In this document: piece after piece, positions 7,779 through 63,418 of the stretch | Position numbering within the stretch: position 1 is the first letter of the stretch | Layout: the number at the start of each line of letters is the position of its first letter | Virus record (IMG/VR): IMGVR_UViG_3300033233_000001 | Location: 186,001-250,000 of that record | Strand: one strand, 5' to 3' | Length of the DNA stretch: 64,000 nt | Notes under the pieces: model-generated | What the model was told of the DNA's origin: nothing | Databases searched by the model: none | What the model saw: the letters and a program-made list of their open reading frames with translations, nothing else | Position numbers and translations under genes: made by a program

Positions 7779-8099
7779 TTACAACATGATCTGGTACTTC
7801 CGACCGTCGATCTGCACATGCAGAAGAAGCTCGCCGCCTAGCGCGGCGCTGTACCTCGCTAGCGTCGAGAGACGGCAGTCCGCGCGCTTCTCGGCGCGCG
7901 ACACCTCGCTCTGGGTAATTTTCGCGCGCTTGGCGACCTGCTCTTGCGTCATGCCAATCGCGCCGCGCAGCAGCCGAAGCGAGTACTTGCGACGCGGCTG
8001 AACGCCACGACCAAGGTACTCCCACGTCGAGAAGTCGACCTCCGGCATCTCCGGAAGCTCGTCGTCGACATCAACGCGCTTCTTGGCAGTCTTCTTCAT
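7779..8099 (-). CDS. XRE/Cro HTH protein, putative antitoxin
   Basis: LR.AIGMTQEQVAKRAKITQSEVSRAE...D.RLSTL..Y..ALGG; coupled to BrnT. Confidence 0.85.
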   Translation of the reverse strand: MKKTAKKRVDVDDELPEMPEVDFSTWEYLGRGVQPRRKYSLRLLRGAIGMTQEQVAKRAKITQSEVSRAEKRADCRLSTLARYSAALGGELLLHVQIDGRKYQIML

Positions 8100-8443
8100 A
8101 GGGCTTCGCCTCCGGCTGCGTAACGCAGCGCCTCTCGCTTCTCTGCGAGACGCGCGGAGATGATCCTCGTTCTGGTCACGGATTCCCGCTCCGCATGAAC
8201 CACGTACAGAACGCGCGCAGCGTTGGACATGCCGATGACCACGAACCGCTCGTCGTCCTCATGAGGATCTTTCAGAGTCATCGCGCGATCATCATCGAAT
8301 GCCGTCGTGGCCTCCTCGAAGGTCACGCCGTGCTTCTTCAGGTTCGCCGCGGCCTTCTGAGGATCCCACTCGTATTCCTCGTGCTCCCCGTAGACCACCG
8401 TCTCCGTGGCAACGTTCTTACGCGACGTTCTCTTCTTTCTCAT
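8096..8443 (-). CDS. brnT: BrnT-family toxin with N-terminal basic tag
   Basis: YEWDPQKAAANLKKHGVTFEEA..AF.D...RIISAR; starts MRKKRTSRKN. Confidence 0.9.
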   Translation of the reverse strand: MRKKRTSRKNVATETVVYGEHEEYEWDPQKAAANLKKHGVTFEEATTAFDDDRAMTLKDPHEDDERFVVIGMSNAARVLYVVHAERESVTRTRIISARLAEKREALRYAAGGEAL

Positions 8444-8451
8444 GCCACCGC

Positions 8452-8480
8452 AACATACGCGCAAAGCGCTAGCACGTCAA
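8452..8480 (-). promoter_or_regulatory. sigma70-type promoter for brnT-HTH (near-leaderless)
   Basis: TTGACG-N17-TATGTT; ATG 8 nt after the -10. Confidence 0.7.
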
Positions 8481-8526
8481 GAGCCTTTTTTTCGGCGAGG
8501 CGCGCTACGAGCTTACGCGGACTAGA

Positions 8527-8883
8527 TCAGGACAGGTCTTTCGGATGCGGCGCAGCAGGCGGATGGAGATTGCCGCACTCCTCGCACGTGAACGGATCTG
8601 CCGACTCCAGTTCGAGTAGCGCCGCCTCGAACGCGGTCTCGACCGCGAAGTGGGTCTTCTCGACATCGCTGGCCTCGCGCGCCAGCCCTGACGTCGAAAC
8701 CAGCGAGTGGAGGCGCGCTTCGGCTGCGCGATATCGTGCCGCAGCCGCTTCCTTCCGCAGGTGCTCGTAGACGTAGCATCTGGCTTCCCACGGGAGCGTC
8801 TCCCAGAAGACGACGCTCGGATCGTCCTCGTCCAACAGATCGGCCGGCGGCGCGCCTGAATCGCCCTTCTTCTTCTCGCTCAC
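8527..8883 (-). CDS. Hypothetical protein with C-terminal CxxC
   Basis: Coupled ORF. Confidence 0.7.
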   Translation of the reverse strand: MSEKKKGDSGAPPADLLDEDDPSVVFWETLPWEARCYVYEHLRKEAAAARYRAAEARLHSLVSTSGLAREASDVEKTHFAVETAFEAALLELESADPFTCEECGNLHPPAAPHPKDLS

Positions 8884-9347
8884 GCGGACCTCGCTTTCTT
8901 CGCTACCATCTTCTTGAGCTTTCGCTGCGTCTTCGCGTCACCGACACGCAGCCCTGCGACTTCGAGCGTCGGCCTGTGCTTACGATAGCTGTTGTAGCAC
9001 GTCCCGCGTACTCGAAACCGGAACGGACCTTCCTTGCCACCCATGCGCGTGAACCAGTCTGGCTCGACCCAGCCGATCTTCACCGCAAGCGCCAGGGCCC
9101 GTTTCGGACTGACGCCGTAGAGGTCGAGCAACGCGCGACGAAGCGCGTCGTACGCGTCGCGACGCTGCCTGTCGTGGGCCATGTACAAGGCCGGCGCGGC
9201 CTCGCGGGCGAACGCCTCGTCCGGGCCAGCGGCCTCGTCGAACGCGCAGGCAACCGCGTGCAGCCGTACGACCGCCGCCTGGAGGTCGACGACTCGCAGT
9301 GCGCCGCGGAGCTTGCGCTTGATGGGCTTCATGACGTCGGCGTACAT
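8880..9347 (-). CDS. Hypothetical protein
   Basis: Coupled ORF. Confidence 0.65.
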   Translation of the reverse strand: MYADVMKPIKRKLRGALRVVDLQAAVVRLHAVACAFDEAAGPDEAFAREAAPALYMAHDRQRRDAYDALRRALLDLYGVSPKRALALAVKIGWVEPDWFTRMGGKEGPFRFRVRGTCYNSYRKHRPTLEVAGLRVGDAKTQRKLKKMVAKKARSA

Positions 9348-11145: not shown

Positions 11146-11847
11146 TTATCGACTCCGTCGCTTTCTTGGACGCGACGTCCGCTTGACCGGTCGCGGCAGA
11201 CGAGCCTGGACGAGGGCGAGCGACTGCCGCAGGTCGTCGACGTCAGGATCGCGTGTCTTGAGCGCCCACGCGATCGCGGCAGCGAGCACGGACGCGTCGA
11301 CGTGCTCGGCTGTCTGCTCGATCGCGGCGTGATCCTTTGCTCTGTCGGCCTTCGCCTTCACGAGCAGCACGCCACCAAGCGGCGCGACCGGGATGACAGT
11401 GTCTTCGAGCTTCCGCATTGCAGCCGACTCGATCATCCGCTTCTCTACTGGATGTTGCGCCGCGAGAATTTCCACCGTGAGCCCGAGCGGATTGCGCAGC
11501 GGAATCAGTCGGCGCTGTTGACGAACGACGAACAGCACCTTGTCGTCCATCGTGTGCTCTTCCGGCCTTTTCGCGATCTTGTAGTTGCCGTAACGGTCCG
11601 CCTTCAACGGCGTCCAGTCGAAGTCGTCGACCAGCTTCTCCGCAATGGCGAGCAGATCTGAAGCGGGCACCATGGCATCCAGATCGAGGGTATGTCGCGG
11701 CACGCCGTACGCACGAAGCGCTTGACCACCAATGAGTGCCCAGTGGATATCCATCGCATCGAGAGCACGCCGCAAGTCTTGCAGAGCAAGAGTCACGGCC
11801 GCCGGGCTCGGCGGCTCAGACGCGTCGCTGGTGTTTCTGCGGACCAT
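11146..11847 (-). CDS. Second AbiEii/MNT-like nucleotidyltransferase with C-terminal basic tag
   Basis: WALIGGQALRAYGVPRHTLDLDA; ends PVKRTSRPRKRRSR. Confidence 0.82.
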   Translation of the reverse strand: MVRRNTSDASEPPSPAAVTLALQDLRRALDAMDIHWALIGGQALRAYGVPRHTLDLDAMVPASDLLAIAEKLVDDFDWTPLKADRYGNYKIAKRPEEHTMDDKVLFVVRQQRRLIPLRNPLGLTVEILAAQHPVEKRMIESAAMRKLEDTVIPVAPLGGVLLVKAKADRAKDHAAIEQTAEHVDASVLAAAIAWALKTRDPDVDDLRQSLALVQARLPRPVKRTSRPRKRRSR

Positions 11848-11890: not shown

Positions 11891-14854
11891 TTACGCGGTC
11901 GGCTCGCGGTGCGCAATCGCCCACTCGACGACGTACTTCTGCGCCTCGGCCACGGTCGGCAGCGTCTTACTCGGCGGGCCGCCTTCGTACGTGTACGCGT
12001 AGCCCGTGCCATCGCGTTCCTTCTCAACCTTCACGTCGAGCGGGCCGGCGCGGCCACTGCCCTCGCCCTGCGTCACGCGCCAGTCAGACGGATTGAGTCT
12101 CCACGTGTTCTCGTACGGAATCCACACAAGATTATCGCCGTACCGACGGTGGATGCCGTGCTCTTTCTCGTACTCGCCGATCGCGCCTGGCGTCATGTCC
12201 TGGAGCTTGTTGTACGGGCCGTAGCCGTAACCGCCGACGTCGGCACGCATGACCTCTTCACCACGCTGCCCGACGTAGCCGGTGCGCAGTGTGTACCAGT
12301 ACGCGTTTCCTGTGTCGATCGCCTTCGGACCCTTGATCCAAGTGTAGACGCCGACATCGCTCGGCGCCTCGATGCGCGCCCGCGGGTCAGCCGGCAGACT
12401 CGCCCACGCAAGACTGGCAAGCTCACGCGCCTGCTCATCCGTGACGTCGCGAAGCACACCGGTCGCCAGCAGCGCGTCATGGAGTTTCAGGGCGGTCTTC
12501 GGCTTCATGACGAACTCGGCACGCTTCGGCGGATGCCGGCGGAAGTCCGTCAGTGATTCGAGCGGGTTGATGTAGTGGCGTTCAAGGTCAGCGGCCACTC
12601 GCTCTGGAGTCGCCTTGCCGCCCTCGATGTCACGCATCCCGCTCCACGTGAAGCCGTCCCACGCTTGCAGTGCGTACGCGACGCGTCCGACCACGACATC
12701 CCACGGCACCTCGGCCTTCTCGATCTGCCCTGCTTTACGCGCTGCGCCCTCCTCGCGCGCCTGGACGTTCACGGCCTTCAAGATCTTCTTCGCCGCGGCC
12801 TTCATGCCGAAGGCGATCTTGATGTTCTCCGTCAGCGCATACGCGTACGCCTGGTCATGCAGGCCGTAGCCCTGCATGTGCGTCACTTCGTGGATGACCG
12901 ACGCGCAGAGTTCTTCGAGATCGCGCTCGCTCCCGAGATCGAAGTGGTCACCCTCTTCCTCGTACTTGAAGTCGCCGAGCGCCTTGAGCTTGATCGGATT
13001 CAGGAGCAGCCAATCGACACCGCCGTGGCTCAACGAACCAGCGCCTACGACCAACTCCTTGCCCTCCGGGTCCGTCTCGGTGTCGAACACCCAGCCAACG
13101 CCGAACGGCTTGAACATGCCCAGCTGGATGAGCGCGTACTTGCTGAGTTCCGCCCAGAGCCGGACGAGCCGCAGATACTTCGGCTGCATCGTCGCAGGGT
13201 CGAGCTTCTTCGGGACCTTGTAGCCCGGCAACGTCTGCTCGATCAGGAAGTCCGGCTTCCACGCCGCCATGCGGATGGCGCCCGCGACCTGCTCGACCTT
13301 CATGAGTTCAACGCCGCCGAGAACAGCGCGCACGGCTTCCACGTGCGGGCTCAGGTCGACTTCCGCCGCTCCAGAGCCAGAGGCCGACGCGAAGCTGCCG
13401 CGCTCTTTGGCCTCGGTGACGATCCGAATCGCAGTATCGAGCACTAGCTCGTTGATCGAGAAGCTCCTGCCGGCCTTCTTCGGCTGCATCTCGGTGACGT
13501 CGAACTTCTCCAGCGTCTTGGCGGCAACTTCGGCGGCGATACCCTCGCGAGCGTCGAGCGCGCCAGTGCCCTCGATAACGCGGCGGAAGCACGCCTCTTT
13601 CGCACGCTGCGCCTTGAGCGCAGACATCGGGTCAACAGACAGCTTCTTCACGAACTGCTTGACCGTGTCGCGGGCGCTCGATTCCCAGGAGAGAGCATCG
13701 CGCTTCTTCGTGAAGACCGAGCGTGGCGGAGCTTTGATGTCGACGTAGACGACACCCTTGAAGCCGCCCTTGCCGTCCTCGTTGCCAGACTCCTCGAACA
13801 TGAAGACGCCGTTGCCGCGGATGTAGACGCCGTGGCGGCGCGCGCGCGGCTGATGCCAGATCTCCATCGACCCGATCTCGCGCCGGTCGCTGAGCACGAT
13901 AGGGACGTCCGCGATCTTCGTTCCGCCCCGCAGGTCGGCGTCTACGCGCTTGCCGTTGACTGTCGTAACGATGCCAGGAAGGTAGCTGCGTTCGAGGATC
14001 GACATCGCGAACTCCGGCGATGTCGTCCGGTTCATGGGCATCCAGACCTTGACCTCCGTGCCCTGGATGGACTTCTGCCCGCCCTCGATGCCGGGCATGA
14101 ACAGGTCTTCGTGCCGACCACGTGCGACGAGGTCTCGCGTGCGCACCTCGTAGCCGAGCCACGGCGTCAGGATGAGTTCCTTCGCGTCGCCGAAGCCACC
14201 GACAGAACCCGCCTCCTTCACGGAGCCGCCACGCGTGAAGAACGCGGCCTTCAGCGTCGCCTCGTCCATACCAGTACCGTTGTCGCGCGCGATGACGACC
14301 ATCGCAGGCGTGCTCTCGTTCGTGTCGGGGTCGGTGAATGTCCCGGCTTCGCACGTCCAGTCGAAACGCGTAGCGCGCGCGTCACGCGAGTTCTGCGCGA
14401 CCTCGCGCCACCAAGCGAGTTCCCATTTGTCGTACGACTCGATGCGCCGTGCGTAGTAGTCGCCGGTCGTGCCCCAGCCGATCGTCGGCGGGTTCTCGCG
14501 GAGACGGTAGTACTCCTCTTCGGTCATCTCGCCGGAGAGGCCGAGCGCGGCGCTCGGCACACGCGGTTCCGAGAGCACCTCGAAGTGGTAGACGCTACCC
14601 TCGACGAAGAAGGTCTCCTCGCCGGGCATGACCAACGGGTGCCATTCGAGTGCCTTCGCGACGCCGTAGGCCTGCTGCCCGGTAGTAGTGTAGTAGGCGC
14701 CCGGCTTGCCGAGCAGAGCGCTTATGTCGCTGATGACCTCGATGAACGTCGGGTCGTTCGGGCGCGCCTCGTTGCCGACGAGCTTCGGGTTCCCGCGGAG
14801 GCGCGCGCGGCGAGAGGTACGCTTGGCCGGACGTGATGTTCGCTTCATGGTCAT
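11891..14854 (-). CDS. 987-aa GHKL (HATPase_c) ATPase with downstream HExxH motif and N-terminal basic tag
   Basis: REVAQNSRDA, DNGTGM, GGFGDAK, GTEV boxes; SVIHEVTHMQGYGLHD; starts MTMKRTSRPAKRTSRR..GNP. Confidence 0.85.
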   Translation of the reverse strand: MTMKRTSRPAKRTSRRARLRGNPKLVGNEARPNDPTFIEVISDISALLGKPGAYYTTTGQQAYGVAKALEWHPLVMPGEETFFVEGSVYHFEVLSEPRVPSAALGLSGEMTEEEYYRLRENPPTIGWGTTGDYYARRIESYDKWELAWWREVAQNSRDARATRFDWTCEAGTFTDPDTNESTPAMVVIARDNGTGMDEATLKAAFFTRGGSVKEAGSVGGFGDAKELILTPWLGYEVRTRDLVARGRHEDLFMPGIEGGQKSIQGTEVKVWMPMNRTTSPEFAMSILERSYLPGIVTTVNGKRVDADLRGGTKIADVPIVLSDRREIGSMEIWHQPRARRHGVYIRGNGVFMFEESGNEDGKGGFKGVVYVDIKAPPRSVFTKKRDALSWESSARDTVKQFVKKLSVDPMSALKAQRAKEACFRRVIEGTGALDAREGIAAEVAAKTLEKFDVTEMQPKKAGRSFSINELVLDTAIRIVTEAKERGSFASASGSGAAEVDLSPHVEAVRAVLGGVELMKVEQVAGAIRMAAWKPDFLIEQTLPGYKVPKKLDPATMQPKYLRLVRLWAELSKYALIQLGMFKPFGVGWVFDTETDPEGKELVVGAGSLSHGGVDWLLLNPIKLKALGDFKYEEEGDHFDLGSERDLEELCASVIHEVTHMQGYGLHDQAYAYALTENIKIAFGMKAAAKKILKAVNVQAREEGAARKAGQIEKAEVPWDVVVGRVAYALQAWDGFTWSGMRDIEGGKATPERVAADLERHYINPLESLTDFRRHPPKRAEFVMKPKTALKLHDALLATGVLRDVTDEQARELASLAWASLPADPRARIEAPSDVGVYTWIKGPKAIDTGNAYWYTLRTGYVGQRGEEVMRADVGGYGYGPYNKLQDMTPGAIGEYEKEHGIHRRYGDNLVWIPYENTWRLNPSDWRVTQGEGSGRAGPLDVKVEKERDGTGYAYTYEGGPPSKTLPTVAEAQKYVVEWAIAHREPTA

Positions 14855-16492: not shown

Positions 16493-16774
16493 ATGAAGCG
16501 CAACAGCAGGGCGCCCAAGCGCACGAGCCGCCGGCAGGTGATCGATGTCGTGCTGACCCGTGACCCAGGGTCCGGCTGGTGGATCGGGTCCACGCCGACG
16601 CTCGCTGGGGCGTATGGGCAGGGCCGCACACAGGCCGCTGCGAAGCAGAACCTCATGGAAGCGGTCGAGGACCATCTCGAAACGTATCGCCTGCTCGGCG
16701 AGAAGCCGCCGCTCGTGCGTCGCGTGCACATGGAGCGAGTGGTTCGCAAAGCGTCGAACCGGGTAGTGTCCTAG
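16493..16774 (+). CDS. hicB: HicB-family antitoxin with N-terminal basic tag
   Basis: P.LAGAYGQGRTQAAAKQNLMEAVE..LE; inverted repeat CCTAGCACG/CGTGCTAGG upstream. Confidence 0.85.
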   Translation: MKRNSRAPKRTSRRQVIDVVLTRDPGSGWWIGSTPTLAGAYGQGRTQAAAKQNLMEAVEDHLETYRLLGEKPPLVRRVHMERVVRKASNRVVS

Positions 16775-49384: not shown

Positions 49385-49398
49385 ATGACTTCTTCTCC

Positions 49399-49692
49399 TC
49401 ATCGAGCCTCGCGGCTCGTCCTCTTGTTGCGACGCGGGCGCGACGTGCGCTTGCGGCCTCGGTTCTTCTTCAGTCCAGTCTTCTTCCACGCACGGAACTC
49501 GCCAGGCGTCACGTTGATGCGCTGCGCCGTTCTCTCGATGCTGCCCCAGCCTGCCTCGGCCAAAGCGGCCGAGCCCAGGTAGCCTTCATCGACGAAGCCT
49601 TTGACGCTGCCTCGCTCACCGAAGACGATCCATCCGCGTCGCGGGTTGCCGTTCGTGTCGTTGGTCGTCGCGATGTACACAGCCAGCATCAC
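49399..49692 (-). CDS. Small domain plus C-terminal KRTSR tag
   Basis: NDTNGNPRRGWIV; KKNRGRKRTSRPRRNKRTSR. Confidence 0.8.
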   Translation of the reverse strand: MMLAVYIATTNDTNGNPRRGWIVFGERGSVKGFVDEGYLGSAALAEAGWGSIERTAQRINVTPGEFRAWKKTGLKKNRGRKRTSRPRRNKRTSREAR

Positions 49693-50174: not shown

Positions 50175-50177
50175 GAC

Positions 50178-52102: not shown

Positions 52103-53067
52103 TCGAGACTTCCCTTCAGCGCTGTCACCAGCGCGGACATCGCGGAACTAGACACCGGAGTAAACGTCGTGGCAATCCCAGAACGGAAAACCTGCTTGTT
52201 CATCGACGACGGAAGCCCGAGAACAGGCGGCCGGATCGTCGCGGCCGCAAACGCCGCTCTCGCAGCATCGCTCGCACTCGCAATCGCCGTTCGCCGAACG
52301 ATCTGCCGTGGCGTCTCGCCAGACAGGACCGCCGCCAGCAGCTTCTCCGGAATCCGAATCTCATCACCGTTCGTGTTGGGACCGAAGTTGAAGCCGCCCG
52401 GCCAGTCACCATAGTCGAGGCGCGCCGCGCCGCTGTTCACGAGCGCTACTCCCTCGTCGTAGTAGGCCTTCAACGCCTGGGCCATCGCGCCATCGTCCTT
52501 CGTGCTCACCGGTGCCGAGGGGGACAGGTATCCACTCTGCATGAGTGCGTTTCGCAACACGTCCTTGTACAAGCTATCGGCCACGTACAGCCGCACGTAG
52601 CCATCCGGATTCACGATCCAACGAGGCACACTCGTGCTCGTCAGACGCTCGTAGAGCGGCCGAGAAATCTGGAGATCTTTGCTGGAGTTCGTGTTGGGAC
52701 CGAAGTCGGTACCCGTCGGCCACTCCGCGTCGTTCCGACCAGTCCTCACCCAGTACGAGCGCACCGCCGTGATGAACGGGCCGTCATCCCTGATCTCATA
52801 GTCGTGGCTGCCATCCCACTTCTGCACGTTGCGACGCGCCGTGAAGAGATGACTGTCAGCGTCGACGTTCCGACGATCGATCACGCCCAAGTCGGCCAGC
52901 CTCGACATCATGGCGTTCAGGACAGCCTCGTCTCCGATCTTCACGTAGTCCATGTCGCCATGCCGGAACGCGCTGGCCTGCATCGAACTCCACGAAGGCA
53001 GCGACGAGGGCGAGGGCGGCGTCTGTCCAAGACCGTTCCGCCGAACGCGAGGCATACGATAGGTCAT
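52099..53067 (-). CDS. MTY-GLG protein with two internal repeats (PG-binding-like)
   Basis: DFGPNTN/NFGPNTN; L..LG....DDG...A...Y pattern twice. Confidence 0.7.
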   Translation of the reverse strand: MTYRMPRVRRNGLGQTPPSPSSLPSWSSMQASAFRHGDMDYVKIGDEAVLNAMMSRLADLGVIDRRNVDADSHLFTARRNVQKWDGSHDYEIRDDGPFITAVRSYWVRTGRNDAEWPTGTDFGPNTNSSKDLQISRPLYERLTSTSVPRWIVNPDGYVRLYVADSLYKDVLRNALMQSGYLSPSAPVSTKDDGAMAQALKAYYDEGVALVNSGAARLDYGDWPGGFNFGPNTNGDEIRIPEKLLAAVLSGETPRQIVRRTAIASASDAARAAFAAATIRPPVLGLPSSMNKQVFRSGIATTFTPVSSSAMSALVTALKGSLE

Positions 53068-54971: not shown

Positions 54972-55090
54972 GACTGATCTCCGTACTTACGTTCCCACGC
55001 CCTGGCCTCAGGGCTGTTTTCGTACCTGACCGCGGCGACAAACCAGAGCGCGAATGCGCCGACCGCCATCCACTTGAGTCGCTCAGACAT
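54968..55090 (-). CDS. 40-aa single-TM peptide
   Basis: Coupled at both ends. Confidence 0.5.
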   Translation of the reverse strand: MSERLKWMAVGAFALWFVAAVRYENSPEARAWERKYGDQS

Positions 55091-55431
55091 CAGCGCCTCC
55101 GCTTGTTTCGACGCGCCCTGCGACGACCACGATTGGCCGTGGGCGACGCCGCGCGCGCCTTCATGCGCGTATAGAAGAACCACAGCGACCATGCACTCAA
55201 CCCGAGACTCACGAACGCGACGTACTCCATGCGCCGCGCGCGCGCACGGTCTTCATCGATGAACGCGTCCTGCCCGAGATGGTCGTTCATCAGCCGCGGC
55301 GGATGCGTCTGAAACACCATGGGAGAGACCTGGCCACGAAGCCGCTGGGGCTGGCCGTAGTCGGCGAAGACCCATGGGTTCGTAACGCCCCACCTCTGGA
55401 AGCCGAGCGACCTGTCGACCTTGTAGCTCAT
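55090..55431 (-). CDS. MSY membrane protein with basic tail
   Basis: MSYK..SLGF..HLGQ; TM; TANRGRRRARRNKRRR. Confidence 0.78.
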   Translation of the reverse strand: MSYKVDRSLGFQRWGVTNPWVFADYGQPQRLRGQVSPMVFQTHPPRLMNDHLGQDAFIDEDRARARRMEYVAFVSLGLSAWSLWFFYTRMKARAASPTANRGRRRARRNKRRR

Positions 55432-55892
55432 CGAGATCTCCCGCTGGTCCGCTTCTTCGGCCGGCGGCTGCCGCGCTTCTTGCTGCCGCGCTTCTTGTTC
55501 GCACGAAGCGGCGAGCCGTGGATCTCGCCGTCGTCGACGTACAGGTCGAACATCCCAAACTTCTTCGCCGCTTTCGAGAGGCGCTTCTGGTTCTCTTCGG
55601 ACAGATCGTCCTCGTCCCAAAAACCAGTGCCATGACCGTTCCTGTTCAACCAGAAACGGTTGCCCGCGCGATCGTCGTCGATGCCGGCCTGATCGTCTGT
55701 CGCGCTCCAGAAGTACTCGTTGCCACCGAAGAACTCCTCGCAGTCTCGCTTCATCGCTGCGAGCGTCTCTGCTGCGATGTCAGCGGGTCCGTAGTGCTTG
55801 TCGAGCGGTTCGCCGCCAGACTCGTCGCTCTCGTCGTTCGTCGACCAGAGCGCCGCTTCGATGTACGCATCCGTGAACTTCTTGAGGCTCAT
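55428..55892 (-). CDS. Small phage-type domain plus C-terminal tag
   Basis: F.DAYIEAALWS...FWLNRNGHGTGFWD; RANKKRGS..KKRTSGRSR. Confidence 0.85.
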   Translation of the reverse strand: MSLKKFTDAYIEAALWSTNDESDESGGEPLDKHYGPADIAAETLAAMKRDCEEFFGGNEYFWSATDDQAGIDDDRAGNRFWLNRNGHGTGFWDEDDLSEENQKRLSKAAKKFGMFDLYVDDGEIHGSPLRANKKRGSKKRGSRRPKKRTSGRSR

Positions 55893-56572
55893 CGTGCCCT
55901 CCCGCTGGTCCGCTTCTTCGGTCGACGGGAACCACGCTTGTTCTTCCGGAACCCGTACACGCCGAGTTCCTTCGCGAGCACCACCATTTCTGCGTCCGTG
56001 AAGCCCTCGGGATGGAACGAACGGCGACGCTCTTCGCCGCGCTCGAAGTACCCCCGGTCCTGTACGACATCCGTCTCGGTGAACCAGCGCGGCACACCAG
56101 CAGAGGAGTCGGCTTCGAGTGAGCCGCCAGACTCGTACCTGAGCTTCTTTGCGGCAGCCTCAACCCAGCCGATGCCGTCGTCCTCGTCGAGGTCGTCCGG
56201 CGTGATGAGCATCGAGTCGTCCCAGCCGCGCTCAGCGACATCGCCCTCTTCTGCGCTCTCGGGCGTCACGATGTCGTAGGTCACGTTGATCACGCGGCAC
56301 TCGTCGCCGCCGGGACGCGTGACGGTCCACTCGGCCGCCGCGCCGCCGCCGCCCGTGTAGCTCTGGCCGGGCTTGAGTGCCTTGAGCGCCTTGACCTCGT
56401 CATCGCCGAGGCCCTCGCCGTTCACGCGCAGGAACTCATGCAGCGACGTCGGAGCCTCGCCTTGAGCCTCAGTGTCGCCGTAATCGGCAGGCGAATGGTA
56501 GGTGATCTCTCCATCGATCAAGATCGTGAAGTGGTCACCGGTCCTGCCGTTGCGCTTCGGGCGCCTAGTCAT
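55889..56572 (-). CDS. Two acidic domains, tagged at both ends
   Basis: MTRRPKRNG; VTYDIVTPESAEEGD; RKNKRGSRRPKKRTSGRAR. Confidence 0.82.
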   Translation of the reverse strand: MTRRPKRNGRTGDHFTILIDGEITYHSPADYGDTEAQGEAPTSLHEFLRVNGEGLGDDEVKALKALKPGQSYTGGGGAAAEWTVTRPGGDECRVINVTYDIVTPESAEEGDVAERGWDDSMLITPDDLDEDDGIGWVEAAAKKLRYESGGSLEADSSAGVPRWFTETDVVQDRGYFERGEERRRSFHPEGFTDAEMVVLAKELGVYGFRKNKRGSRRPKKRTSGRAR

Positions 56573-57009
56573 CGACGCCTCCGGCTCGTGCGCTTCTTCG
56601 GGCGACTCGTGCGCCTGCGACGCGGAACCGGGTTCCGACGCGAACGGCGGCTCCTGCGCTTCCCGCGATTCGCCGCCGTTCCATGCTGGATCCGGTACTC
56701 CGCCGCCCATTCCTCGGCCATGTCTTTCGCGACCTGCTTGCGCGTGGCCGGCGTGAACATCGAGTTCCACCGATCAGGCGTCCCCTCCTCACGTGCCCAC
56801 TTCTTGGCGCCCGCGTCGACGAGGTACTTGAAAGCCGCAGGCGCGCGCGCCGCGTCGAAGACGCCGCGCTTCATCTTCTTTTCGAGACCTTTGTGAACGT
56901 ACGTCGTCGTCGATCGATACAAGTCGCCATCGTTGTCGATGTAGAGCTTGAGATCATCCGCGCTGTACACGCGGTTACAACGAGAAGTACGCGTTGTTCG
57001 ACGGACCAT
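56569..57009 (-). CDS. Small phage-type domain tagged at both ends
   Basis: LKLYIDNDGDLYR..F.YLVDAGAKK; AANRGK..KKRTSRRRR. Confidence 0.82.
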   Translation of the reverse strand: MVRRTTRTSRCNRVYSADDLKLYIDNDGDLYRSTTTYVHKGLEKKMKRGVFDAARAPAAFKYLVDAGAKKWAREEGTPDRWNSMFTPATRKQVAKDMAEEWAAEYRIQHGTAANRGKRRSRRSRRNPVPRRRRTSRPKKRTSRRRR

Positions 57010-57011
57010 CG

Positions 57012-57353
57012 TCAGTCCTCGCTCTTCGTCTTGAACTTGAAGTGCTTGTTCTTCTCGAACTTCTTCTTCTTCGATCGCGCCTGCCGCGGCCGCCACCATC
57101 CGAAGTAGAACCACAGCGCGCCGATCGCAGTCGCGCCCGTTCCGAACCAGAAGTAGTTGGCCCGATAAAACGGCACAGCCTCCGGCGCGGGCGGAACCTG
57201 CCCGATGCCGTACAGCGGATATGGTGCCATCCCGGCCGCCTGCCGAGCGCCGCCGCTCGCACGGCGCGCCTGCGACGCGTACGAGAGCGGCGCGTCGCTC
57301 TCGTCACCGCCGATGACGTAGTCCTGTGCTGTCATGGTGCGTGCTGCGGGCAT
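57012..57353 (-). CDS. GIG membrane protein
   Basis: LYGIGQ; TM; KKKFEKN. Confidence 0.7.
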   Translation of the reverse strand: MPAARTMTAQDYVIGGDESDAPLSYASQARRASGGARQAAGMAPYPLYGIGQVPPAPEAVPFYRANYFWFGTGATAIGALWFYFGWWRPRQARSKKKKFEKNKHFKFKTKSED

Positions 57354-57356: not shown

Positions 57357-58856
57357 TTAGTTCCTCTTTCCTCGACTGCGCTTCGAGCGCCGACTGTTCC
57401 GCTTCATCTTGCGCATCATGCGCCGCCAGCTGCCCTTGACGTTCTCAGTCACCTTCTGACCAGCTTCCGTCTGGGTCGCCGCGAGGTAGCCGACGCCGAG
57501 CACCGCAGCGCCGATGACGATGTTGCGCGGCGTCAGAAAGCCCGTCGGCGTCTGCCCAGCGGGCACAATCGCCGTCCCGTCCGGCGAAGTCTGCGCGACC
57601 TCGCCCATGCCGGCAGCGGCAGGAGAGTGGTAGAACGCTCCGAGGTCCGTCTGGAGCTTCTGCTGGTCGGCCACGAGCGGCGAAAGGTGGTCGCTTGCCG
57701 CCTTCTTCAACGCCGGCTGATTGGCTCGCACGGCCATCGCCATGCGGTCGAGACGCGGCAGACCGCCGCCGGCCTTCGCGCGGTCGGCAAGGTCGCGCAT
57801 CGTCGCGTGCATCACGCAGTGCGCGAGCGTGTCTTCGAGCGCCGCATCCGGCCGGTAGCCCATCTGGATCAGACGGTCCGCCACGAGCTTCGCCTTCTTC
57901 GACATCTGCGGCCCAAGAGCCTCGGTCGCAGTCGACAGGAACCGCGACCGCGTGTTCGGGTCGTGCATCATCTTGGCCTCCGCCAAGAGACACTGCGCAG
58001 CGCGCCGCCCGAATGCCTCGATGTGCGACTGCGGGCCAGTGCGATCCTTCGCCATCTTGGGCATCGCTCGACTCTGCCGACTCGGACCCTGCGCGTTGCC
58101 GTTCATGTACGGACTGAACGCAGCGGGCGGCGGATTCAGAGACGGCACGCGCTTGCTGAGGGGAACGCCAGAGGCGTTCACCTGCGTGACGGTCCAGTTG
58201 TCGGCAGTCGAGTCCCACATGGCAGACTGCTGAATCCCGTCCGCGTCCTCTTCTGCGATGTACGCTGGCTCTGCGAACTTGTTCGCGAAGATACCGTCGC
58301 GCACACGAAAGGTCACGCCCTCCGGCATGTCGAAAATGCCGGCGCCGATGACGTTCTGCTCGCTCGTGTCGTACTCGTAGGACGACCGGTCGTATTCCGT
58401 CAGCGGATCGACATCCTCCTGGGACGGCATCTCGTTCTGCTGCGTCGGCCGGAAGCGTGAAATCCGAGCCTCACCGTCGGGACTGACTGCGATGCTGCGC
58501 GGTGCGAGCGCGGTACCTGGACCTGCATCGCCAAGGTCCGACATATCCGTGTGCTGCTGCGAGAACGGACGGTAGCCCGTGTCGCTAGCGGTTTCCCACG
58601 GGTTCGCGCCGTAGGTCGTCTGGTTGATGCCAGGGCCATTGTCGACATCGTCCATCATCGTGAACGACTTCGTGCCCTCGATGTCTGTCGCGGGCGCAGG
58701 GCCGCCGCCCTTCTTCGGCACGGTCTCCTGAAGGTCATCGGTCAGGAAGTCGTCGTCCATCGACGAGCCCTGGTAGTCCTGCACGTCGAGATTGGCGTTG
58801 CCGCGCATCGTCGGCAGTTCCATCTCGTCATCGTTGAACAGATCGTCGTCGCTCAT
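57357..58856 (-). CDS. 499-aa membrane protein with acidic N-half
   Basis: AAGMGE; TM; KRNSRRSKRSRGKRN. Confidence 0.8.
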   Translation of the reverse strand: MSDDDLFNDDEMELPTMRGNANLDVQDYQGSSMDDDFLTDDLQETVPKKGGGPAPATDIEGTKSFTMMDDVDNGPGINQTTYGANPWETASDTGYRPFSQQHTDMSDLGDAGPGTALAPRSIAVSPDGEARISRFRPTQQNEMPSQEDVDPLTEYDRSSYEYDTSEQNVIGAGIFDMPEGVTFRVRDGIFANKFAEPAYIAEEDADGIQQSAMWDSTADNWTVTQVNASGVPLSKRVPSLNPPPAAFSPYMNGNAQGPSRQSRAMPKMAKDRTGPQSHIEAFGRRAAQCLLAEAKMMHDPNTRSRFLSTATEALGPQMSKKAKLVADRLIQMGYRPDAALEDTLAHCVMHATMRDLADRAKAGGGLPRLDRMAMAVRANQPALKKAASDHLSPLVADQQKLQTDLGAFYHSPAAAGMGEVAQTSPDGTAIVPAGQTPTGFLTPRNIVIGAAVLGVGYLAATQTEAGQKVTENVKGSWRRMMRKMKRNSRRSKRSRGKRN

Positions 58857-60714: not shown

Positions 60715-61155
60715 TCACTTCCTTCTGCGACGCCGACGAACGTTCGGGCTGACCGAGGCCGGCGCGGCCGCTCTGGCCGGAGCGGGCCTCATGGCCACCG
60801 TGATGAGCGCGACCGCAACGGCAGCGCCGCCGATGCCGATGTACGTCAGCGTGTTGTCCGGTGCGGGCACCATCGGCATGACCGGAGCCCAACTCGTCGA
60901 CGGCGAAGCCGACACGAAGTGCGAGAGGTCGGTCTTCGCCGGTTCCGGACGATAACCCGACGGCTTCGTCCCGCCCGAGGGCGCCGGTGTCGTCGTAGAC
61001 GTCGACGCCCCGGTCGTACTCGACGGCATCCCGATTGACATCGCCGTCAAAGACGACTCCTGTCCGAGCGAGCCCGTGCCGTGGTACTGCGGCACGCGAC
61101 CACGCACTCGGAAGGCCGCGAGACGGTCGAAGATCGGCGAGATCGCGTAGCTCAC
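60715..61155 (-). CDS. VSY-LGQ membrane protein
   Basis: GSLGQ; TM; SPNVRRRRRRK. Confidence 0.75.
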   Translation of the reverse strand: MSYAISPIFDRLAAFRVRGRVPQYHGTGSLGQESSLTAMSIGMPSSTTGASTSTTTPAPSGGTKPSGYRPEPAKTDLSHFVSASPSTSWAPVMPMVPAPDNTLTYIGIGGAAVAVALITVAMRPAPARAAAPASVSPNVRRRRRRK

Positions 61156-61499
61156 CGCGAACGCCTCCGGCGACGGCGGCTGTTGCGCTGCGTGTGCCGA
61201 ACTCCGAAGCCCTGGGCAAGGCTGATCGGAATCGCCAGCGGCCAGAAGGCGCCGCCGATGATGCCCCATACGAGGGCCCACCCGATCGAGTTGTTCCGGC
61301 GGTAGCCGTGGTACGCGAGGGCGCCGACAGATGCAGTGCCCGCGACGAGCATGAGCGTGCGCACGGGCTGCGAAAGGGTCATCGCCGTGCTCGTCTGACC
61401 GGTTACGACCGGAGACGGAGCAGGCGGAATCGTCTGCTGACCGAGTCCAGCCGCCGCGAAGAGTCCGCCGCCAGCGCCGTAATAGCCCATGCCGTTCAT
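61152..61499 (-). CDS. GMG/GLG membrane protein, paralog of 38287
   Basis: AYHGYRRNNSIGWALVWG..GG.FWP; QRNSRRRRRRSR. Confidence 0.8.
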   Translation of the reverse strand: MNGMGYYGAGGGLFAAAGLGQQTIPPAPSPVVTGQTSTAMTLSQPVRTLMLVAGTASVGALAYHGYRRNNSIGWALVWGIIGGAFWPLAIPISLAQGFGVRHTQRNSRRRRRRSR

Positions 61500-61509
61500 T
61501 GTCGTCTCC

Positions 61510-61980
61510 TTACCAGCCACGCACGTAGTTGCCGATGCCTGAAGTGGCTGGCAACGCCCTGTCCGCCGAACCTCGCTGCGTCGTCGACGAGGCCTGTGCG
61601 GCCGCCGCGATCTGCTGCGCCGCAGCCGCCGCCTGCGCGTTCGCAACCGCTGCTGCCTGCGGAGAGCGAGCGCGAAGTTCGAGCACCGCGAGCCAGCCCT
61701 GCGCGTCCCCGTGCACCGACGGACCGACGAGCGCGAGCCAGTCCGCGAGCGCGGCCGGCGACACGCTCTGCCCGACGACGACGACGTCCGCGCGGTTGAC
61801 CATCTCGGCAAAGTCCGGCTGCCATGCCGATCGCGGCTGCGAAAGCATCGAGGCGGCCTGCTGCTTGGCAGAGTCGTACCGCTGACGTCGCGCTTCGGTC
61901 GAAACCGCCATCCCAGGCGGGACCTGGCCGTCCGGTCGTCGACCAGTGAAAACGCTGAGGATTCTGTCGATGAAGTTCAC
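61510..61980 (-). CDS. GIGNYV protein
   Basis: Ends SGIGNYVRGW. Confidence 0.7.
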   Translation of the reverse strand: MNFIDRILSVFTGRRPDGQVPPGMAVSTEARRQRYDSAKQQAASMLSQPRSAWQPDFAEMVNRADVVVVGQSVSPAALADWLALVGPSVHGDAQGWLAVLELRARSPQAAAVANAQAAAAAQQIAAAAQASSTTQRGSADRALPATSGIGNYVRGW

Positions 61981-61995
61981 GTGTTCGTTTCCTTC

Positions 61996-62571
61996 TTACG
62001 CCGCCGACTGGACCGGGAACATCGAGTGCTGCTTCACGCGCCCAAGCATCGACGCCGTACGTCGGCCCGCGACCGGATCGAGAACCCACCAGGTCTTCGT
62101 GCGCGGGTCCTGCGCCGTACAGAAGACGTGCGTGTGGATCTTCTGCTCGCCAGGCCATCGAGGCTGAAAGCCGACGGTCACGAAGCGAACCGGCGCACCG
62201 ATACAGAGGCATCCGGTGCCGATTGCCACAGCGAGGTCGTCGCAGTCCATCGCCGCCCGACCAGAGAGCGCATCGTCGAGCAGACGCTCAGGGTCCCGGA
62301 TCAATTCCTGGTGCAACGGGTCTCGCGTATAGCGACCCGCGTTGCCCCACCATCGGCAGATGGCGATGATCTCGGACGTGTAGTCCTTCGGACGAATGTT
62401 CGCGATGATCTGTTCCGTGTGCCGCCGGACCTTGAACGATTGTTCGCCGCGCGGACCGAGCGCGACCTCGATCATCTTCGCGACGGTGTGATCGGTGCCT
62501 CGGTACGGCTCAACCGTACCGACCGCCGTGTTGTAGGCAGAATTGTAGGCGCTTGCGCGGAGCGACGGCAT
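61996..62571 (-). CDS. Transglutaminase-fold Cys hydrolase (candidate maturation protease)
   Basis: DCDD, HTHVF and VLDP give a Cys-His-Asp triad; first gene of the long minus-strand run. Confidence 0.85.
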   Translation of the reverse strand: MPSLRASAYNSAYNTAVGTVEPYRGTDHTVAKMIEVALGPRGEQSFKVRRHTEQIIANIRPKDYTSEIIAICRWWGNAGRYTRDPLHQELIRDPERLLDDALSGRAAMDCDDLAVAIGTGCLCIGAPVRFVTVGFQPRWPGEQKIHTHVFCTAQDPRTKTWWVLDPVAGRRTASMLGRVKQHSMFPVQSAA

Positions 62572-62714
62572 ATTTCTGCCGTGCCCGAGGCGCCCGGATG
62601 GAAGTCTCGCACATAGACCGGTCGATGTGCAAGTGCCGAAGCCGCCCGATCTCAAACCGCTGGCGTCGTTACCACGGCGTGCTAACGTCACGAGCAAGGA
62701 GCAGCGTTTGCACG

Positions 62715-62948
62715 ATGAACACCACCATCAGGAAGATCGGGAACAGCGACGGCGTCATCATTCCGGCGGCCGTCATGGCGCGCCTGGGCATGGAGACAGG
62801 CGATCCGGTTACTCTCGACGTCGAGGGTAGCCGACTCGTGATCTCGTCGAGGTCCGGCGCGGCCTCTGACAGCGGCGACTTCGAGCGCGCGGCCGTTGCC
62901 GTGACGAGGCGCTACGCGTCGCTTCTTCGTAAGCTGGCCGACTTGTGA
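62715..62948 (+). CDS. AbrB/MazE-family antitoxin
   Basis: IRKIGNSDGVIIP....LG...GD.V. Confidence 0.88.
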   Translation: MNTTIRKIGNSDGVIIPAAVMARLGMETGDPVTLDVEGSRLVISSRSGAASDSGDFERAAVAVTRRYASLLRKLADL

Positions 62949-63418
62949 GCCACTTCCGCTACCTCAGCGTCGACGAGGTTCTGGCTCTTCACGAGATAGC
63001 AATTCAGAATGGCGGCGGTGGCCCACTTGAAGTCCGAGACCCAGGCGGAGTCGAAGCTGCCGTTTTTCAACCGCAAGCCGGCTTCGGAGACATTCTATTC
63101 TACAAGACCGTCCCCGAGATTGCCGCTGCTTACGCGTATTTCATCGCACAACGGCAGGCTTTCGTCGAGGGCAACAAAAGGACCGGATGGCTTGCGGCCT
63201 GCACCTTCGTCGAGATGAACGGCGGCCTAGTCGAAGCCACGGACGACGACGCCATCCAGATGCTACTGGAGGTCTCAAAAGGCCTGTCGCTGGAAAGCGT
63301 GGCGGACTGGTTTGCCGAGCGCATCGTCCAACTGGTACACGAAAATCTCCCGAAACGGAACAGCAGACCAAAGCGCACGAGTCGCAGGTCGAAGCGCGCT
63401 AGCAGGCCGAAGCGCTAG
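62945..63418 (+). CDS. doc: Doc/Fic-family toxin with C-terminal basic tag; motif His replaced by Gln
   Basis: RQAFVEGNKRTG; VRD.GG.EAAV.QP; ends KRNSRPKRTSRRSKRASRPKR. Confidence 0.85.
   Translation: MSHFRYLSVDEVLALHEIAIQNGGGGPLEVRDPGGVEAAVFQPQAGFGDILFYKTVPEIAAAYAYFIAQRQAFVEGNKRTGWLAACTFVEMNGGLVEATDDDAIQMLLEVSKGLSLESVADWFAERIVQLVHENLPKRNSRPKRTSRRSKRASRPKR

What the first reader, a model, noticed from the sequence alone, without database searches (positions are those of the whole stretch)
8096..63418. Genome-wide KRTSR...Asn basic tag on unrelated proteins: candidate virion cargo-loading and release code
Seen: more than 20 unrelated proteins carry a terminal or internal Arg/Lys/Ser/Thr tract with a KRTSR core. 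Examples are BrnT 8096, NTase 11146, GHKL protein 11891, HicB 16493 and 34960, 24290, 35837, 40216, 41227, 44273, 44956, 45660, 47198, 47659, 49399, 55428, 55889, 56569 and Doc 62945. The tag/domain border is usually an Asn: N-terminal tags end RN-P/G/D/S, and C-terminal tags start after AN, PN, KN or RN. Genes at 2.1-7.8 kb lack it, which is an internal control. Established: basic tails bind and condense DNA in viral cores (adenovirus pVII, microvirus J). Inference: the tag is a transferable address that co-packages cargo with the genome, and the Asn marks a processing site that frees the folded domain. I know of no description of such a system in a bacterial virus.
Basis: partly seen in the sequence, partly recalled or inferred. 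Interest (0 to 1): 0.92.

Follow-up and report, generated by a model that had tools for sequence, protein, structure and literature searches.

The report
Polybasic KRTSR/Asn tags across phage proteins
In an uncultured ~298-kb bacterial virus and its relatives, about a third of the proteins in this window, including toxin-antitoxin enzymes taken from bacteria, carry short protamine-like arginine/lysine/serine tags bounded by a conserved asparagine; these most likely tie the proteins to the viral DNA, but this has not been tested.

Summary
KRTSR occurs 22 times in 89 predicted proteins, against 0.03 expected. It is written with 21 different 15-mers, using both serine codon families, so selection acts on the peptide and not on a DNA repeat. 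31 of 89 proteins have a terminal K/R tract. N-terminal tags end in RRN followed by P/G/A. C-terminal tails start after (P/A)(T/S)(A/P)N. Asn is enriched at both junctions (p about 1e-8) and is kept in orthologues from four other contigs. The tags are short copies of the repeat unit of a neighbouring protamine/H1-like protein (32134-34356). The nearest BrnT homologue differs by a clean six-residue KKRTSR insertion.

The tags fall into two classes:
- Soluble, mostly accessory proteins carry KRTSR tags.
- About 13 single-pass membrane-type proteins, mostly starting MSY, carry Asn plus poly-Arg tails.

A divergent operon, the 2-8 kb genes and the conserved beta-rich hallmark genes lack tags. No cellular genome and no cultured phage shows the system.

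Best reading: the tags are polyanion (DNA)-binding address modules that hold proteins on the condensed viral genome, probably in the virion core. Cleavage at Asn is plausible but unproven. This is a new variant of polybasic core-protein arms and capsid-targeting tags.

The parts
8096..8443 (-). BrnT toxin with N-terminal tag MRKKRTSRK. The Pfam domain starts at residue 26.
   Evidence: the nearest homologue lacks KKRTSR
11146..11775 (-). Weak nucleotidyltransferase-like protein with C-terminal KRTSRPRKRRSR
11891..14854 (-). 987-aa protein with a weak GHKL match. N-tag MTMKRTSRPAKRTSRRARLRGN followed by P.
   Evidence: orthologues in L118, L081 and L144 keep a tag ending N-P
16493..16774 (+). 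HicB-like (UPF0150) protein with N-tag MKRNSRAPKRTSRR
21533..21805 (-). MSY protein with a hydrophobic segment, then N and RRRRKRRR
23377..23913 (-). KOW-like protein with an internal basic block ending RLRRN before PDT, followed by a membrane-like segment
   Evidence: the L144 orthologue has MRRN before PDT
24290..24601 (-). N-tag MRRRRTSRRAPSRRPRSLVRN followed by S
   Evidence: the L144 orthologue reads MKRRRTSRRPKRRSRRN followed by F
31496..32104 (-). N-tag MSKRRNKRLRRN followed by AEG, then membrane-like segments. The C-terminus reads GRGYAGGLYARNLFAGS.
   Evidence: orthologues
32134..34356 (-). Protamine/H1-like protein. About 380 residues are RRxSRRN-type repeats, followed by a hydrophobic/acidic C-terminal half.
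   Evidence: orthologues
34960..35232 (-). HicB-like (UPF0150) protein with N-tag MKRTSRNTPSKRTSRR
35837..38290 (-). 817-aa protein (phrog_2319, RecT-like N-terminal part). An internal linker holds 6 KRxSRP units, around residues 549-607.
   Evidence: In L145 the C-terminal domain is a separate gene with an N-tag; in L148 it is a separate gene without one.
38291..38534 (-). Frameshifted paralogue of 61152-61520, ending KAN then RRRKRTSRRRR
40216..41166 (-). 316-aa protein (phrog_9437 C-terminal domain) with C-tail RRNSRRKKKRTSRRRR and one internal block
41227..42891 (-). MSY protein that looks like a polyprotein. A membrane-like segment is followed by four basic blocks, each ending in N. One block is an in-frame MAKKRTSRKPKRGSRKPVRRN followed by P, with an upstream GAGGAG.
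   Evidence: the L148 orthologue
42891..44260 (-). Two MSY/MTY proteins, each with a hydrophobic segment and an Asn plus poly-Arg tail
44273..46268 (-). Three soluble proteins with double or triple N-tags ending RRN followed by G or P
   Evidence: no orthologue in L003/L148
46265..47185 (-). MSY protein with a hydrophobic segment and VTAN then RGKRRKSTER
47198..48093 (-). Two soluble proteins. The first has an N-tag ending RRN followed by G. The second has both an N-tag ending VRN followed by P and a C-tail after VAN.
48890..52102 (-). Five genes. Four are membrane-type with TAN/TPN then poly-Arg tails: 48890, 49689 (true start MSYRQP at 50174), 50178 and 51002. One is soluble with a C-tag (49399).
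53064..54518 (-). MSY protein with a hydrophobic segment and PTAN then ARRRRARRTSRRTS
55090..57114 (-). One MSY membrane-type protein (55090) and three soluble C-tagged proteins (55428, 55889, 56569) whose tails start after AN or KN
57357..58856 (-). 499-aa protein with an acidic N-terminus, a hydrophobic segment and a basic tail
60715..61520 (-). Two membrane-type proteins ending SPN then VRRRRRRK, and QRN then SRRRRRRSR
61996..62571 (-). Untagged transglutaminase-like (papain-fold) hallmark gene at the head of the tagged operon. It is the only candidate modifying or processing enzyme seen.
62945..63418 (+). Doc (Fic) toxin with C-tail KRN then SRPKRTSRRSKRASRPKR. The upstream MazE/AbrB-type antitoxin is untagged.
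199..1859 (-). Start of a 28-gene tRNA array with 5 tRNA-Arg and 2 tRNA-Lys genes. This fits heavy Arg/Lys use.

Best explanation
The tags are short, disordered, protamine-like polycation modules. Their unit is [KR]R[T/x]S[RK], often followed by RRN, in 1-4 copies. This virus lineage grafts them onto the ends, and into the linkers, of unrelated proteins so that those proteins bind the viral DNA polyanion.

Proposed mechanism:
1. The same repeat builds a dedicated protamine/H1-like protein that condenses the genome.
2. Tagged soluble proteins are held on that nucleoprotein. These include RNA- and translation-targeting toxins, antitoxins, a RecT-like protein and a protein with a weak GHKL match.
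3. About 13 single-pass membrane-type proteins point Asn plus poly-Arg tails at it.
4. The most likely place is the virion core, so that the cargo enters the next host with the DNA.
5. The invariant Asn at each tag/domain junction is a recognition site, possibly a cleavage site.

Shown here: the motif, selection at peptide level, modular gain and loss, conservation across the clade, junction Asn, the protamine-like protein, and restriction of tags to one transcription block.

Inferred, not shown: DNA binding, virion location, delivery into the host, and cleavage.
For: - Enrichment and codon diversity.
- Tract composition is 48% R, 19% K, 11% S and 4% T. The mean tag charge is +10.5 on proteins that are otherwise neutral.
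- Tag insertion into BrnT relative to a 78%-identical homologue.
- Pfam domains lie outside the tags.
- Tags and the RRN junction are conserved in orthologues from L003/L148, L118, L081, L144 and L145, while length and sequence vary.
- The protamine-like protein is conserved in composition, not in sequence. It is R/S/N-rich in the window and L144, and K/A/S-rich in L145 and L148, as DNA-condensing proteins typically are.
- Tags are confined to one co-directional block. They are absent from 17 divergent genes, from the 2-8 kb genes, and from all but one of the 14 genes in the hallmark beta-protein block.
- The tandem-tag DNA pattern found no cellular genome carrying the system among 185,579 species genomes.
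- Five tRNA-Arg genes.
- Only one partner of each toxin-antitoxin pair is tagged.
Against: - No tagged protein could be tied to a virion.
- Capsid, portal and terminase were not found in the window or in about 60 kb of extra sequence.
- AlphaFold models of the two hallmark beta-rich proteins match nothing significant.
- If packaging goes through a portal, DNA affinity cannot carry folded proteins in, so a separate prohead-loading step would be needed.
- Membrane-type proteins are unusual inside tailed-phage heads.
- Asn also occurs inside the tracts, so it may be a binding residue rather than a cut site.
- No Asn-specific protease was identified.
Confidence: 0.45

Rival explanations
1. The tags work inside the infected cell, not in the virion. 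The protamine/H1-like protein coats replicating viral DNA as a protective condensate or viral factory. The tags recruit client enzymes to it, and the membrane proteins tether it to the envelope. Ser/Thr phosphorylation could switch binding on and off.
For: - The tagged proteins include DNA and RNA enzymes: a RecT-like protein, a protein with a weak GHKL match, HicB, BrnT and a nucleotidyltransferase.
- The composition resembles RS and H1 tails.
- A tag sits in an interdomain linker of the 817-aa protein.
- This reading needs no passage through a portal.
Against: - No kinase or phosphatase was seen apart from Doc.
- Restriction of the tags to one long operon next to conserved structural-looking genes fits a late or virion module better.
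- No direct data exist either way.
Confidence: 0.25
2. The tags are a transport or sorting signal read by a protein machine. Examples would be import into a virus-built compartment, or prohead loading through an acidic scaffold. RRN / AN-RR would be the docking or processing site, and charge-based DNA binding would be secondary.
For: - The order K-R-T-S-R is specific beyond composition: 22 observed against 7 after within-tract shuffling.
- The junction Asn is kept across orthologues.
- A second shared N-terminal leader, MSY...G[LM]GQ, sits on 13 proteins.
- A conserved transglutaminase-like enzyme lies in the operon.
- Very acidic or coiled-coil proteins lie nearby.
Against: - No receptor, shell protein or protease was identified.
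- In relative L003 the tails are nearly pure poly-Arg with no KRTSR, which argues that charge matters more than sequence.
Confidence: 0.15
3. The tags are polybasic membrane anchors. They bind acidic phospholipids, and in the membrane-type proteins they simply enforce positive-inside topology.
For: 13 of 22 C-tailed proteins have a hydrophobic, Gly-rich segment 7-31 residues before the tail.
Against: - Tails of 10-20 Arg far exceed what topology requires.
- Soluble enzymes and a 380-residue basic protein carry the same unit.
- This reading does not explain the conserved Asn.
Confidence: 0.08
4. The pattern is an artefact of composition or gene overlap. High GC makes Arg-rich stretches, and C-terminal RRRR reflects the downstream Shine-Dalgarno sequence (GGAGG) and ATGA overlaps.
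For: 15 of 21 C-tailed genes have an SD-like string in their last 27 nt, against 24 of 61 other genes.
Against: - It cannot explain the N-terminal or internal tags.
- It cannot explain tails of 10-20 residues or the K-R-T-S-R order.
- It cannot explain the use of both Ser codon families or the conserved Asn.
- Genes of equal Arg content at 2-8 kb and in the divergent operon lack tags.
Confidence: 0.02

Closest known systems
T4 capsid targeting sequence (CTS) on internal proteins IPI-III and Alt
   Same: It is a short terminal peptide shared by unrelated proteins of one phage. It addresses them to the head interior for co-injection, and anti-defence cargo is among them (PMC3012670, PMC7697877).
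   Different: The CTS is an N-terminal leader of about 10 residues that is not polybasic. It ends in (L/I)xE and is cut by the prohead protease gp21. Here the tags are N-terminal, C-terminal or internal, polycationic and repeated, with Asn at the junction, and cleavage is unproven. The MSY...GLGQ leader on 13 proteins is formally closer to a CTS than the KRTSR tag is.
Protamine-like viral core proteins: baculovirus P6.9, adenovirus pVII/mu, and the hepatitis B core C-terminal domain
   Same: They are Arg/Ser/Thr-rich disordered sequences that neutralise and condense the packaged genome. P6.9 and the HBV C-terminal domain are switched by Ser/Thr phosphorylation (PMC5899202, PMC9121876). Adenovirus precursors are trimmed by a viral cysteine protease (my own knowledge).
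   Different: Those are viruses of animals, and the basic sequence sits on one or a few dedicated proteins. Here a bacterial virus spreads the unit over dozens of unrelated proteins.
Arginine-rich N-terminal arms of small icosahedral virus capsid proteins, and the microvirus J protein
   Same: They are polybasic and disordered, and they face the genome.
   Different: They are part of the coat protein or a single small peptide. They are not a portable tag on enzymes.
C-terminal tripartite sorting signals (LPXTG, PEP-CTERM, GlyGly-CTERM)
   Same: They combine a signature motif, a hydrophobic helix and a basic cluster at the C-terminus of many paralogous proteins.
   Different: The order differs. 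Here the helix comes first, then PTAN, then a very long Arg tail. No sortase or exosortase was seen, and the proteins have no signal peptide.
Asparagine-specific processing: legumain-type endopeptidases and asparagine peptide lyases such as reovirus mu1 N42/P43 and FlhB/YscU N/PTH
   Same: Asn would be the only invariant residue at the junction, and Asn-Pro and Asn-Gly junctions are frequent.
   Different: This is recalled from my own knowledge as a lead only. No such enzyme or fold was found. The lyases need a folded context, whereas these junctions lie in disordered sequence.

Membership tests
T4-type capsid targeting sequence | Short N-terminal leader shared by several internal proteins | tested here: inconclusive
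   KRTSR tags sit at N-termini, C-termini and in linkers. A different shared leader, MSY..G[LM]GQ, exists on 13 proteins.
T4-type capsid targeting sequence | The leader ends in (L/I)xE and is removed by the prohead protease | tested here: not met
   Junctions read RRN followed by P/G/A, or AN followed by RR. No LxE is present. Cleavage itself cannot be tested here.
Protamine-like / polybasic viral core proteins | Disordered tract with more than 40% Arg/Lys and interspersed Ser/Thr | tested here: met
   Tracts are 48% R, 19% K, 11% S and 4% T. Protein 32134-34356 has about 380 residues of such repeats, and the L144 orthologue has about 300 residues of RRNSRRRTSRRA.
Protamine-like / polybasic viral core proteins | Binds and condenses the genome inside the virion | not testable with these tools
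   This needs DNA-binding assays and virion proteomics.
AT-hook | R-G-R-P core flanked by basic residues | tested here: not met
   There is one RGRP in 89 proteins, and it lies outside any tag.
Twin-arginine (Tat) signal peptide | S/T-R-R-x-F-L-K followed by a hydrophobic h-region | tested here: not met
   No matches were found. The N-tags are followed directly by the folded domain.
RS domain / SPKK motifs | Runs of RS/SR dipeptides, or S/T-P-K-K | tested here: not met
   There are no runs of three or more RS/SR, and only 3 scattered [ST]P[KR][KR].
Sortase/exosortase-type C-terminal sorting signal | Signature motif, then a transmembrane helix, then a short basic cluster | tested here: not met
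   The order here is helix, then (P/A)(T/S)(A/P)N, then a tail of 7-20 residues.
BrnT toxin (PF04365), the host domain of one tag | Full-length match to the family profile | tested here: met
   E 1.4e-27, profile positions 1-77 of 77, at residues 26-104. The tag lies outside the domain.
Transglutaminase-like superfamily (PF01841), gene 61996-62571 | Profile match plus a Cys-His-Asp triad | tested here: inconclusive
   The window protein scores E 0.008, below the cut-off. 7 of 30 homologues match, best 2.6e-6. C110, H148 and D165 are invariant. No PDB sequence match.

The most novel reading that the evidence does not exclude
This lineage of 150-300 kb uncultured bacterial viruses uses a proteome-wide, Asn-delimited polybasic address code. 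KRTSR/RRN modules load soluble cargo onto a protamine-condensed genome. That cargo includes free toxins without their antitoxins, and antitoxins without their toxins. A set of MSY-leader membrane proteins with poly-Arg tails wraps the genome. A dedicated enzyme, perhaps the conserved transglutaminase-like protein, cuts or cross-links at the Asn or Gln motifs. The virion core would then be organised more like adenovirus, ASFV or baculovirus than like any known phage, and the virus might not be a conventional tailed phage.
Probability: 0.15. Interest if true: 0.92.

Novelty: new variant of a known kind. Interest (0 to 1): 0.7.

Why it matters
- If the tags tie proteins to the packaged genome, this would be the first protamine-style, tag-based cargo system in a bacterial virus.
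- It would be a natural, portable peptide for loading enzymes into a phage particle.
- It would show how phages could deliver toxins and antitoxins ahead of gene expression to shut off the host or disarm abortive infection.
- It also marks out a widespread clade with no cultured member. There are more than 200 clusters of one hallmark protein and contigs up to 298 kb. Its conserved proteins have no recognisable fold, so basic questions about virion architecture are open.
- The conserved junction Asn gives a sharp hypothesis that N-terminomics can test.

Tried and rejected
- **DNA repeat explanation.** Rejected, because there are 21 distinct 15-mers among 22 sites.
- **RBS/overlap explanation.** It covers only part of the terminal RRRR.
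- **Single-unit DNA pattern scan of viral contigs.** Swamped by chance hits, though it brought in L048, L081 and L118.
- **Tandem-tag pattern in 185,579 species genomes.** 16 hits, all off-frame, tandem DNA repeats or isolated; none shows the system.
- **Pfam and PHROGs on all 89 proteins.** No capsid, portal, terminase or tail protein, and only a weak phrog_53 hit.
- **Tunturi_5 and other jumbo phages.** They share only the RecT-like gene.
- **Cultured phages.** No record among 50,697 has the 311-aa hallmark or the transglutaminase-like gene. No plasmid match.
- **AlphaFold plus Foldseek on the two hallmark beta-rich proteins.** No significant match. Jelly-roll capsid proteins appear only among non-significant hits, so a double- or single-jelly-roll capsid is neither supported nor excluded.
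- **PDB sequence search for the transglutaminase-like profile.** Only spurious designed-repeat hits.
- **Literature.** 'KRTSR' and related terms found no phage report.
- **Other motif families.** AT-hook, Tat, SPKK and RS-repeat readings were tested and not met.
- **Genome walking.** Six look-ups reached a tRNA array, a tag-free divergent operon, and an RNA-repair/metabolic region, but no structural hallmark genes.

Full report
**Source.** The window is bases 186,001-250,000 of IMG/VR contig IMGVR_UViG_3300033233_000001, which is 297,749 bp. An independent ENA assembly of 297,555 bp has rotated coordinates, so the genome is probably complete and circular or circularly permuted. GC content is about 65%. 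Genes are tightly packed, mostly on the minus strand, and often joined by ATGA overlaps. A 28-gene tRNA array starts at window 199-1859. It includes five tRNA-Arg and two tRNA-Lys genes. Only a handful of proteins match Pfam: BrnT, Fic/Doc, a MazE-type antitoxin, AbiEii, RlaP, DUF192, DnaJ, HTH domains and two weak UPF0150/HicB matches. No capsid, portal, terminase or tail family was detected. The 817-aa protein shares its N-terminal part (phrog_2319, annotated RecT-like in one record) with jumbo phages. This is an uncultured, very divergent large bacterial virus.

- KRTSR occurs 24 times in the six-frame translation. Nearly all hits are in frames that carry genes.
- In my 89-protein set it occurs 22 times, against 0.03 expected from per-protein shuffles with a maximum of 2 in 1000.
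- The looser [KR]RxSR occurs 67 times against 1.8.
- Shuffling only within the basic tracts still gives 7 against 22, so the residue order matters and not only the composition.
- The 22 sites use 21 different 15-mers. Ser is coded by both AGY (15) and TCN (7), and Arg by both CGN and AGR. This rules out a DNA repeat and shows selection on the peptide.
- IMG's own gene call for BrnT includes the tag.
24290 needs the ATG at 24601.
- 31 of 89 proteins have a terminal K/R tract and 40 have one somewhere.

**The Asn junction.** Background Asn frequency is 2.7%.
- Asn is the residue exactly after the N-terminal tag in 6 of 10 proteins (p=7e-8).
- Asn is the residue exactly before the C-terminal tail in 9 of 22 (p=3e-9), and within two residues in nearly all.
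- The N-tag consensus is ...RRN followed by P/G/A/S. The C-tail consensus is (P/A)(T/S)(A/P)N followed by R/K.
- The junction is kept in orthologues while the tags themselves drift:
  - The 987-aa protein reads RGN-P in the window, SRN-P in L144, and RRN-P in L118 and L081, with 2 to 3 repeats.
  - The 24290, 31496, 23377 and 32134 families all keep [RT]RN at the junction in L144, L145 or L148.
- One caveat applies. Asn also recurs inside the tracts (RRNSRR, RRNKRR). It is part of the repeat unit as well as the border.

**Two classes of tagged protein.**
- Class A has about 13 proteins. Each has a Gly-rich hydrophobic segment 7-31 residues before Asn plus poly-Arg. Most of them begin MSY or MTY, usually followed within about 10 residues by G[LM]GQ-like residues. 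In all, 13 window proteins start this way. These are conserved and syntenic in relative L003/L148 at 35-70% identity. There the tails are nearly pure Arg/Asn and KRTSR is absent over the 29 genes of L003.
- Class B consists of soluble proteins with KRTSR-type tags. It includes BrnT, Doc, two HicB-like proteins, a nucleotidyltransferase-like protein, the 987-aa protein with a weak GHKL match, and a dozen proteins of unknown function.
- The class B genes at 44273-47656 and 55428-57114 have no counterpart in the syntenic relative. They are accessory insertions inside the conserved operon.

**How the tags arise.**
- The nearest BrnT homologue (78% identical) reads MRKN-VETVVYG. The window reads MRKKRTSRKNVATETVVYG. 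Ordinary bacterial BrnT proteins have no extension.
- Pfam domains lie entirely outside the tags.
- An orthologue that is untagged in the window (25389) is tagged in L118.
- The C-terminal domain of the 817-aa protein is a separate N-tagged gene in L145, a separate untagged gene in L148, and is fused through a six-unit KRxSRP linker in the window and L144.
- The 554-aa protein 41227-42891 carries four internal blocks that each end in Asn. One block keeps an in-frame ATG with a GAGGAG upstream. This looks like a gene fusion or a polyprotein.

**The key neighbour.** Protein 32134-34356 has about 380 residues made almost entirely of RRxSRRN-type repeats, followed by a hydrophobic/acidic half.
- Its L144 orthologue contains about 300 residues of RRNSRRRTSRRA repeats.
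- The L145 and L148 orthologues instead have a histone-H1-like K/A/S-rich block plus RRN blocks.
- Conservation of composition without conservation of sequence is typical of DNA-condensing proteins.
- The KRTSR and RRN tags are therefore one to four copies of this protein's repeat unit.

**Distribution.**
- Within the window, terminal tracts occur in 0 of 11 proteins at 2.1-7.8 kb, 7 of 20 at 8-21 kb, 1 of 14 at 21.5-31.2 kb (the block with the conserved beta-rich genes), and 22 of 40 at 31.4-62.6 kb.
- The 17-gene divergent operon beyond the right edge has no [KR]RxS[KR] unit at all, although its Arg content is equal.
- Tags recur at 108-115 kb of the same genome (L048) and in contigs from other samples: L081, L118, L144 at 259 kb, L145 at 177 kb and L148 at 153 kb.
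- The 311-aa protein 27601-28536 and the 191-aa protein 61996-62571 each have more than 150-200 homologue clusters at 57-84% identity and no annotation.
- Neither protein has a homologue among 50,697 phage records.
- A tandem-tag DNA pattern scanned against 185,579 species genomes returned only 16 chance hits.

**Interpretation.** The best-supported reading is that the tags are polyanion-binding address modules that hold proteins on the viral DNA, which is condensed by the protamine-like protein. I place this most probably in the virion core, for three reasons:
- The tags are confined to one long operon next to the most conserved, structural-looking genes.
- Polybasic arms in viruses nearly always face the packaged genome.
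- Only one partner of each toxin-antitoxin pair is tagged. The BrnT and Doc toxins are tagged. The HicB antitoxin is tagged while its HicA neighbour in L144 is not. This makes sense for delivering free toxin, or free antitoxin, with the incoming DNA.

Confidence is only 0.45. Virion location is not shown. Folded proteins cannot ride DNA through a portal. The main rival, an intracellular nucleoprotein condensate or factory with tagged clients, fits almost as well.

Cleavage at Asn fits the geometry, since Asn is always on the domain-proximal side of the tag. I put it at about 0.3, because no Asn-specific protease was found. The only enzyme candidate is the transglutaminase-like hallmark gene. 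PF01841 matches 7 of 30 homologues (best 2.6e-6), and Cys, His and Asp are invariant. Its link to the tags is inference only.

**Comparison with known systems.**
- T4's capsid targeting sequence is a precedent for a portable, cleavable cargo tag in a phage (PMC3012670, PMC7697877).
- Baculovirus P6.9 and the HBV core C-terminal domain are precedents for Arg/Ser/Thr-rich, phosphorylation-regulated genome-binding sequences (PMC5899202, PMC9121876).
- The system here differs from each of them. It is polybasic, repeated, works at either end, is Asn-delimited, is spread over dozens of unrelated proteins, and occurs in a bacterial virus.
- AT-hook, Tat, SPKK, RS-repeat and sortase-type signals were tested and not met.
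- I found no description of this system in the literature searches.

**Verdict.** The pattern is real, striking and conserved across the clade. I rate it a new variant of a known kind, with interest 0.7.

Noticed in passing
window 199-1859 (-), continuing left of the window (L146:11916-18361): A tRNA array. 11 genes lie in the window and 28 in all, including 5 tRNA-Arg (CCT, TCT, ACG x2, CCG) and 2 tRNA-Lys.
   Followed up: partly
window 29738-31283 (-): A conserved gene of about 260 aa is split. Exon 1 (MPKIVGTRERVHQP) lies at about 31242-31283. Next comes a LAGLIDADG endonuclease ORF at 30554-31159, with a weak group I intron match at 30514-30802 (23 bits, E 0.005). Exon 2 is the ORF 29738-30502. 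A second LAGLIDADG ORF (28617-29657) sits between this gene and the 311-aa hallmark gene.
   Followed up: partly
window 27601-28536 (-) and 29738-30451 (-): Two beta-rich hallmark proteins. The 311-aa protein is 58-84% identical in more than 200 clusters. Neither has a Pfam or PHROG match or a significant structural match (AlphaFold pLDDT 68.5 and 78.1). Their role, possibly capsid, is unknown.
   Followed up: partly
window 61996-62571 (-): A transglutaminase-like (papain-fold) protein with invariant Cys, His and Asp. It is 57-83% identical in more than 150 clusters and has no homologue in cultured phages.
   Followed up: partly
window 38291-38534 (-): A paralogue of 61152-61520 is broken across two reading frames. 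This could be a frameshift, a pseudogene or a sequencing error. The second frame ends in a KRTSRRRR tail.
   Followed up: no
13 genes, e.g. window 21533, 41227, 42891, 46265, 49689, 50178, 51002, 53064, 54531, 55090, 60715: These proteins start MSY or MTY, often followed by R and then G[LM]GQ within about 10 residues. The leader is also present in relatives L003, L118, L144 and L148. It is a second shared short motif, formally similar to a capsid-targeting leader. Related motifs recur: GIGNY, NLFxG and GRGYAGGLxARNLFAG.
   Followed up: partly
window 54531-54971 (-): An odd 146-aa protein. It has an MSY start, then long Gly runs, then a Trp/Tyr/Cys-rich end. It has no tail and no match.
   Followed up: no
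window 62715-63418 (+), 7779-8443 (-), 16493-16774 (+), 34960-35232 (-): Toxin-antitoxin-type genes in a virus: MazE-type antitoxin with Doc, BrnT with an HTH partner, and two HicB-like genes with no HicA recognised by Pfam in the window. A HicA does sit beside the HicB orthologue in L144.
   Followed up: partly
L142:1-8927 (contig 254.1-263.1 kb, beyond the right edge of the window): A divergently transcribed block of 17 small genes with no Pfam matches and no tags. It is probably an early operon.
   Followed up: partly
L147 (same genome, about 98-124 kb): A region with peptidyl-tRNA hydrolase PTH2, adenylosuccinate synthetase, an RtcB ligase interrupted by an intein-like insert, and an SNF2 helicase. 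Only two tagged proteins lie here.
   Followed up: no
window 38947-40216: Gene calls are unclear here because ORFs overlap on both strands. In relative L148 this position holds a 296-aa N-tagged protein (MAAKRTSRQRRRTSKRIRAN...), and only its last 63 residues match the window (38947-39150). The window copy may be degraded.
   Followed up: no
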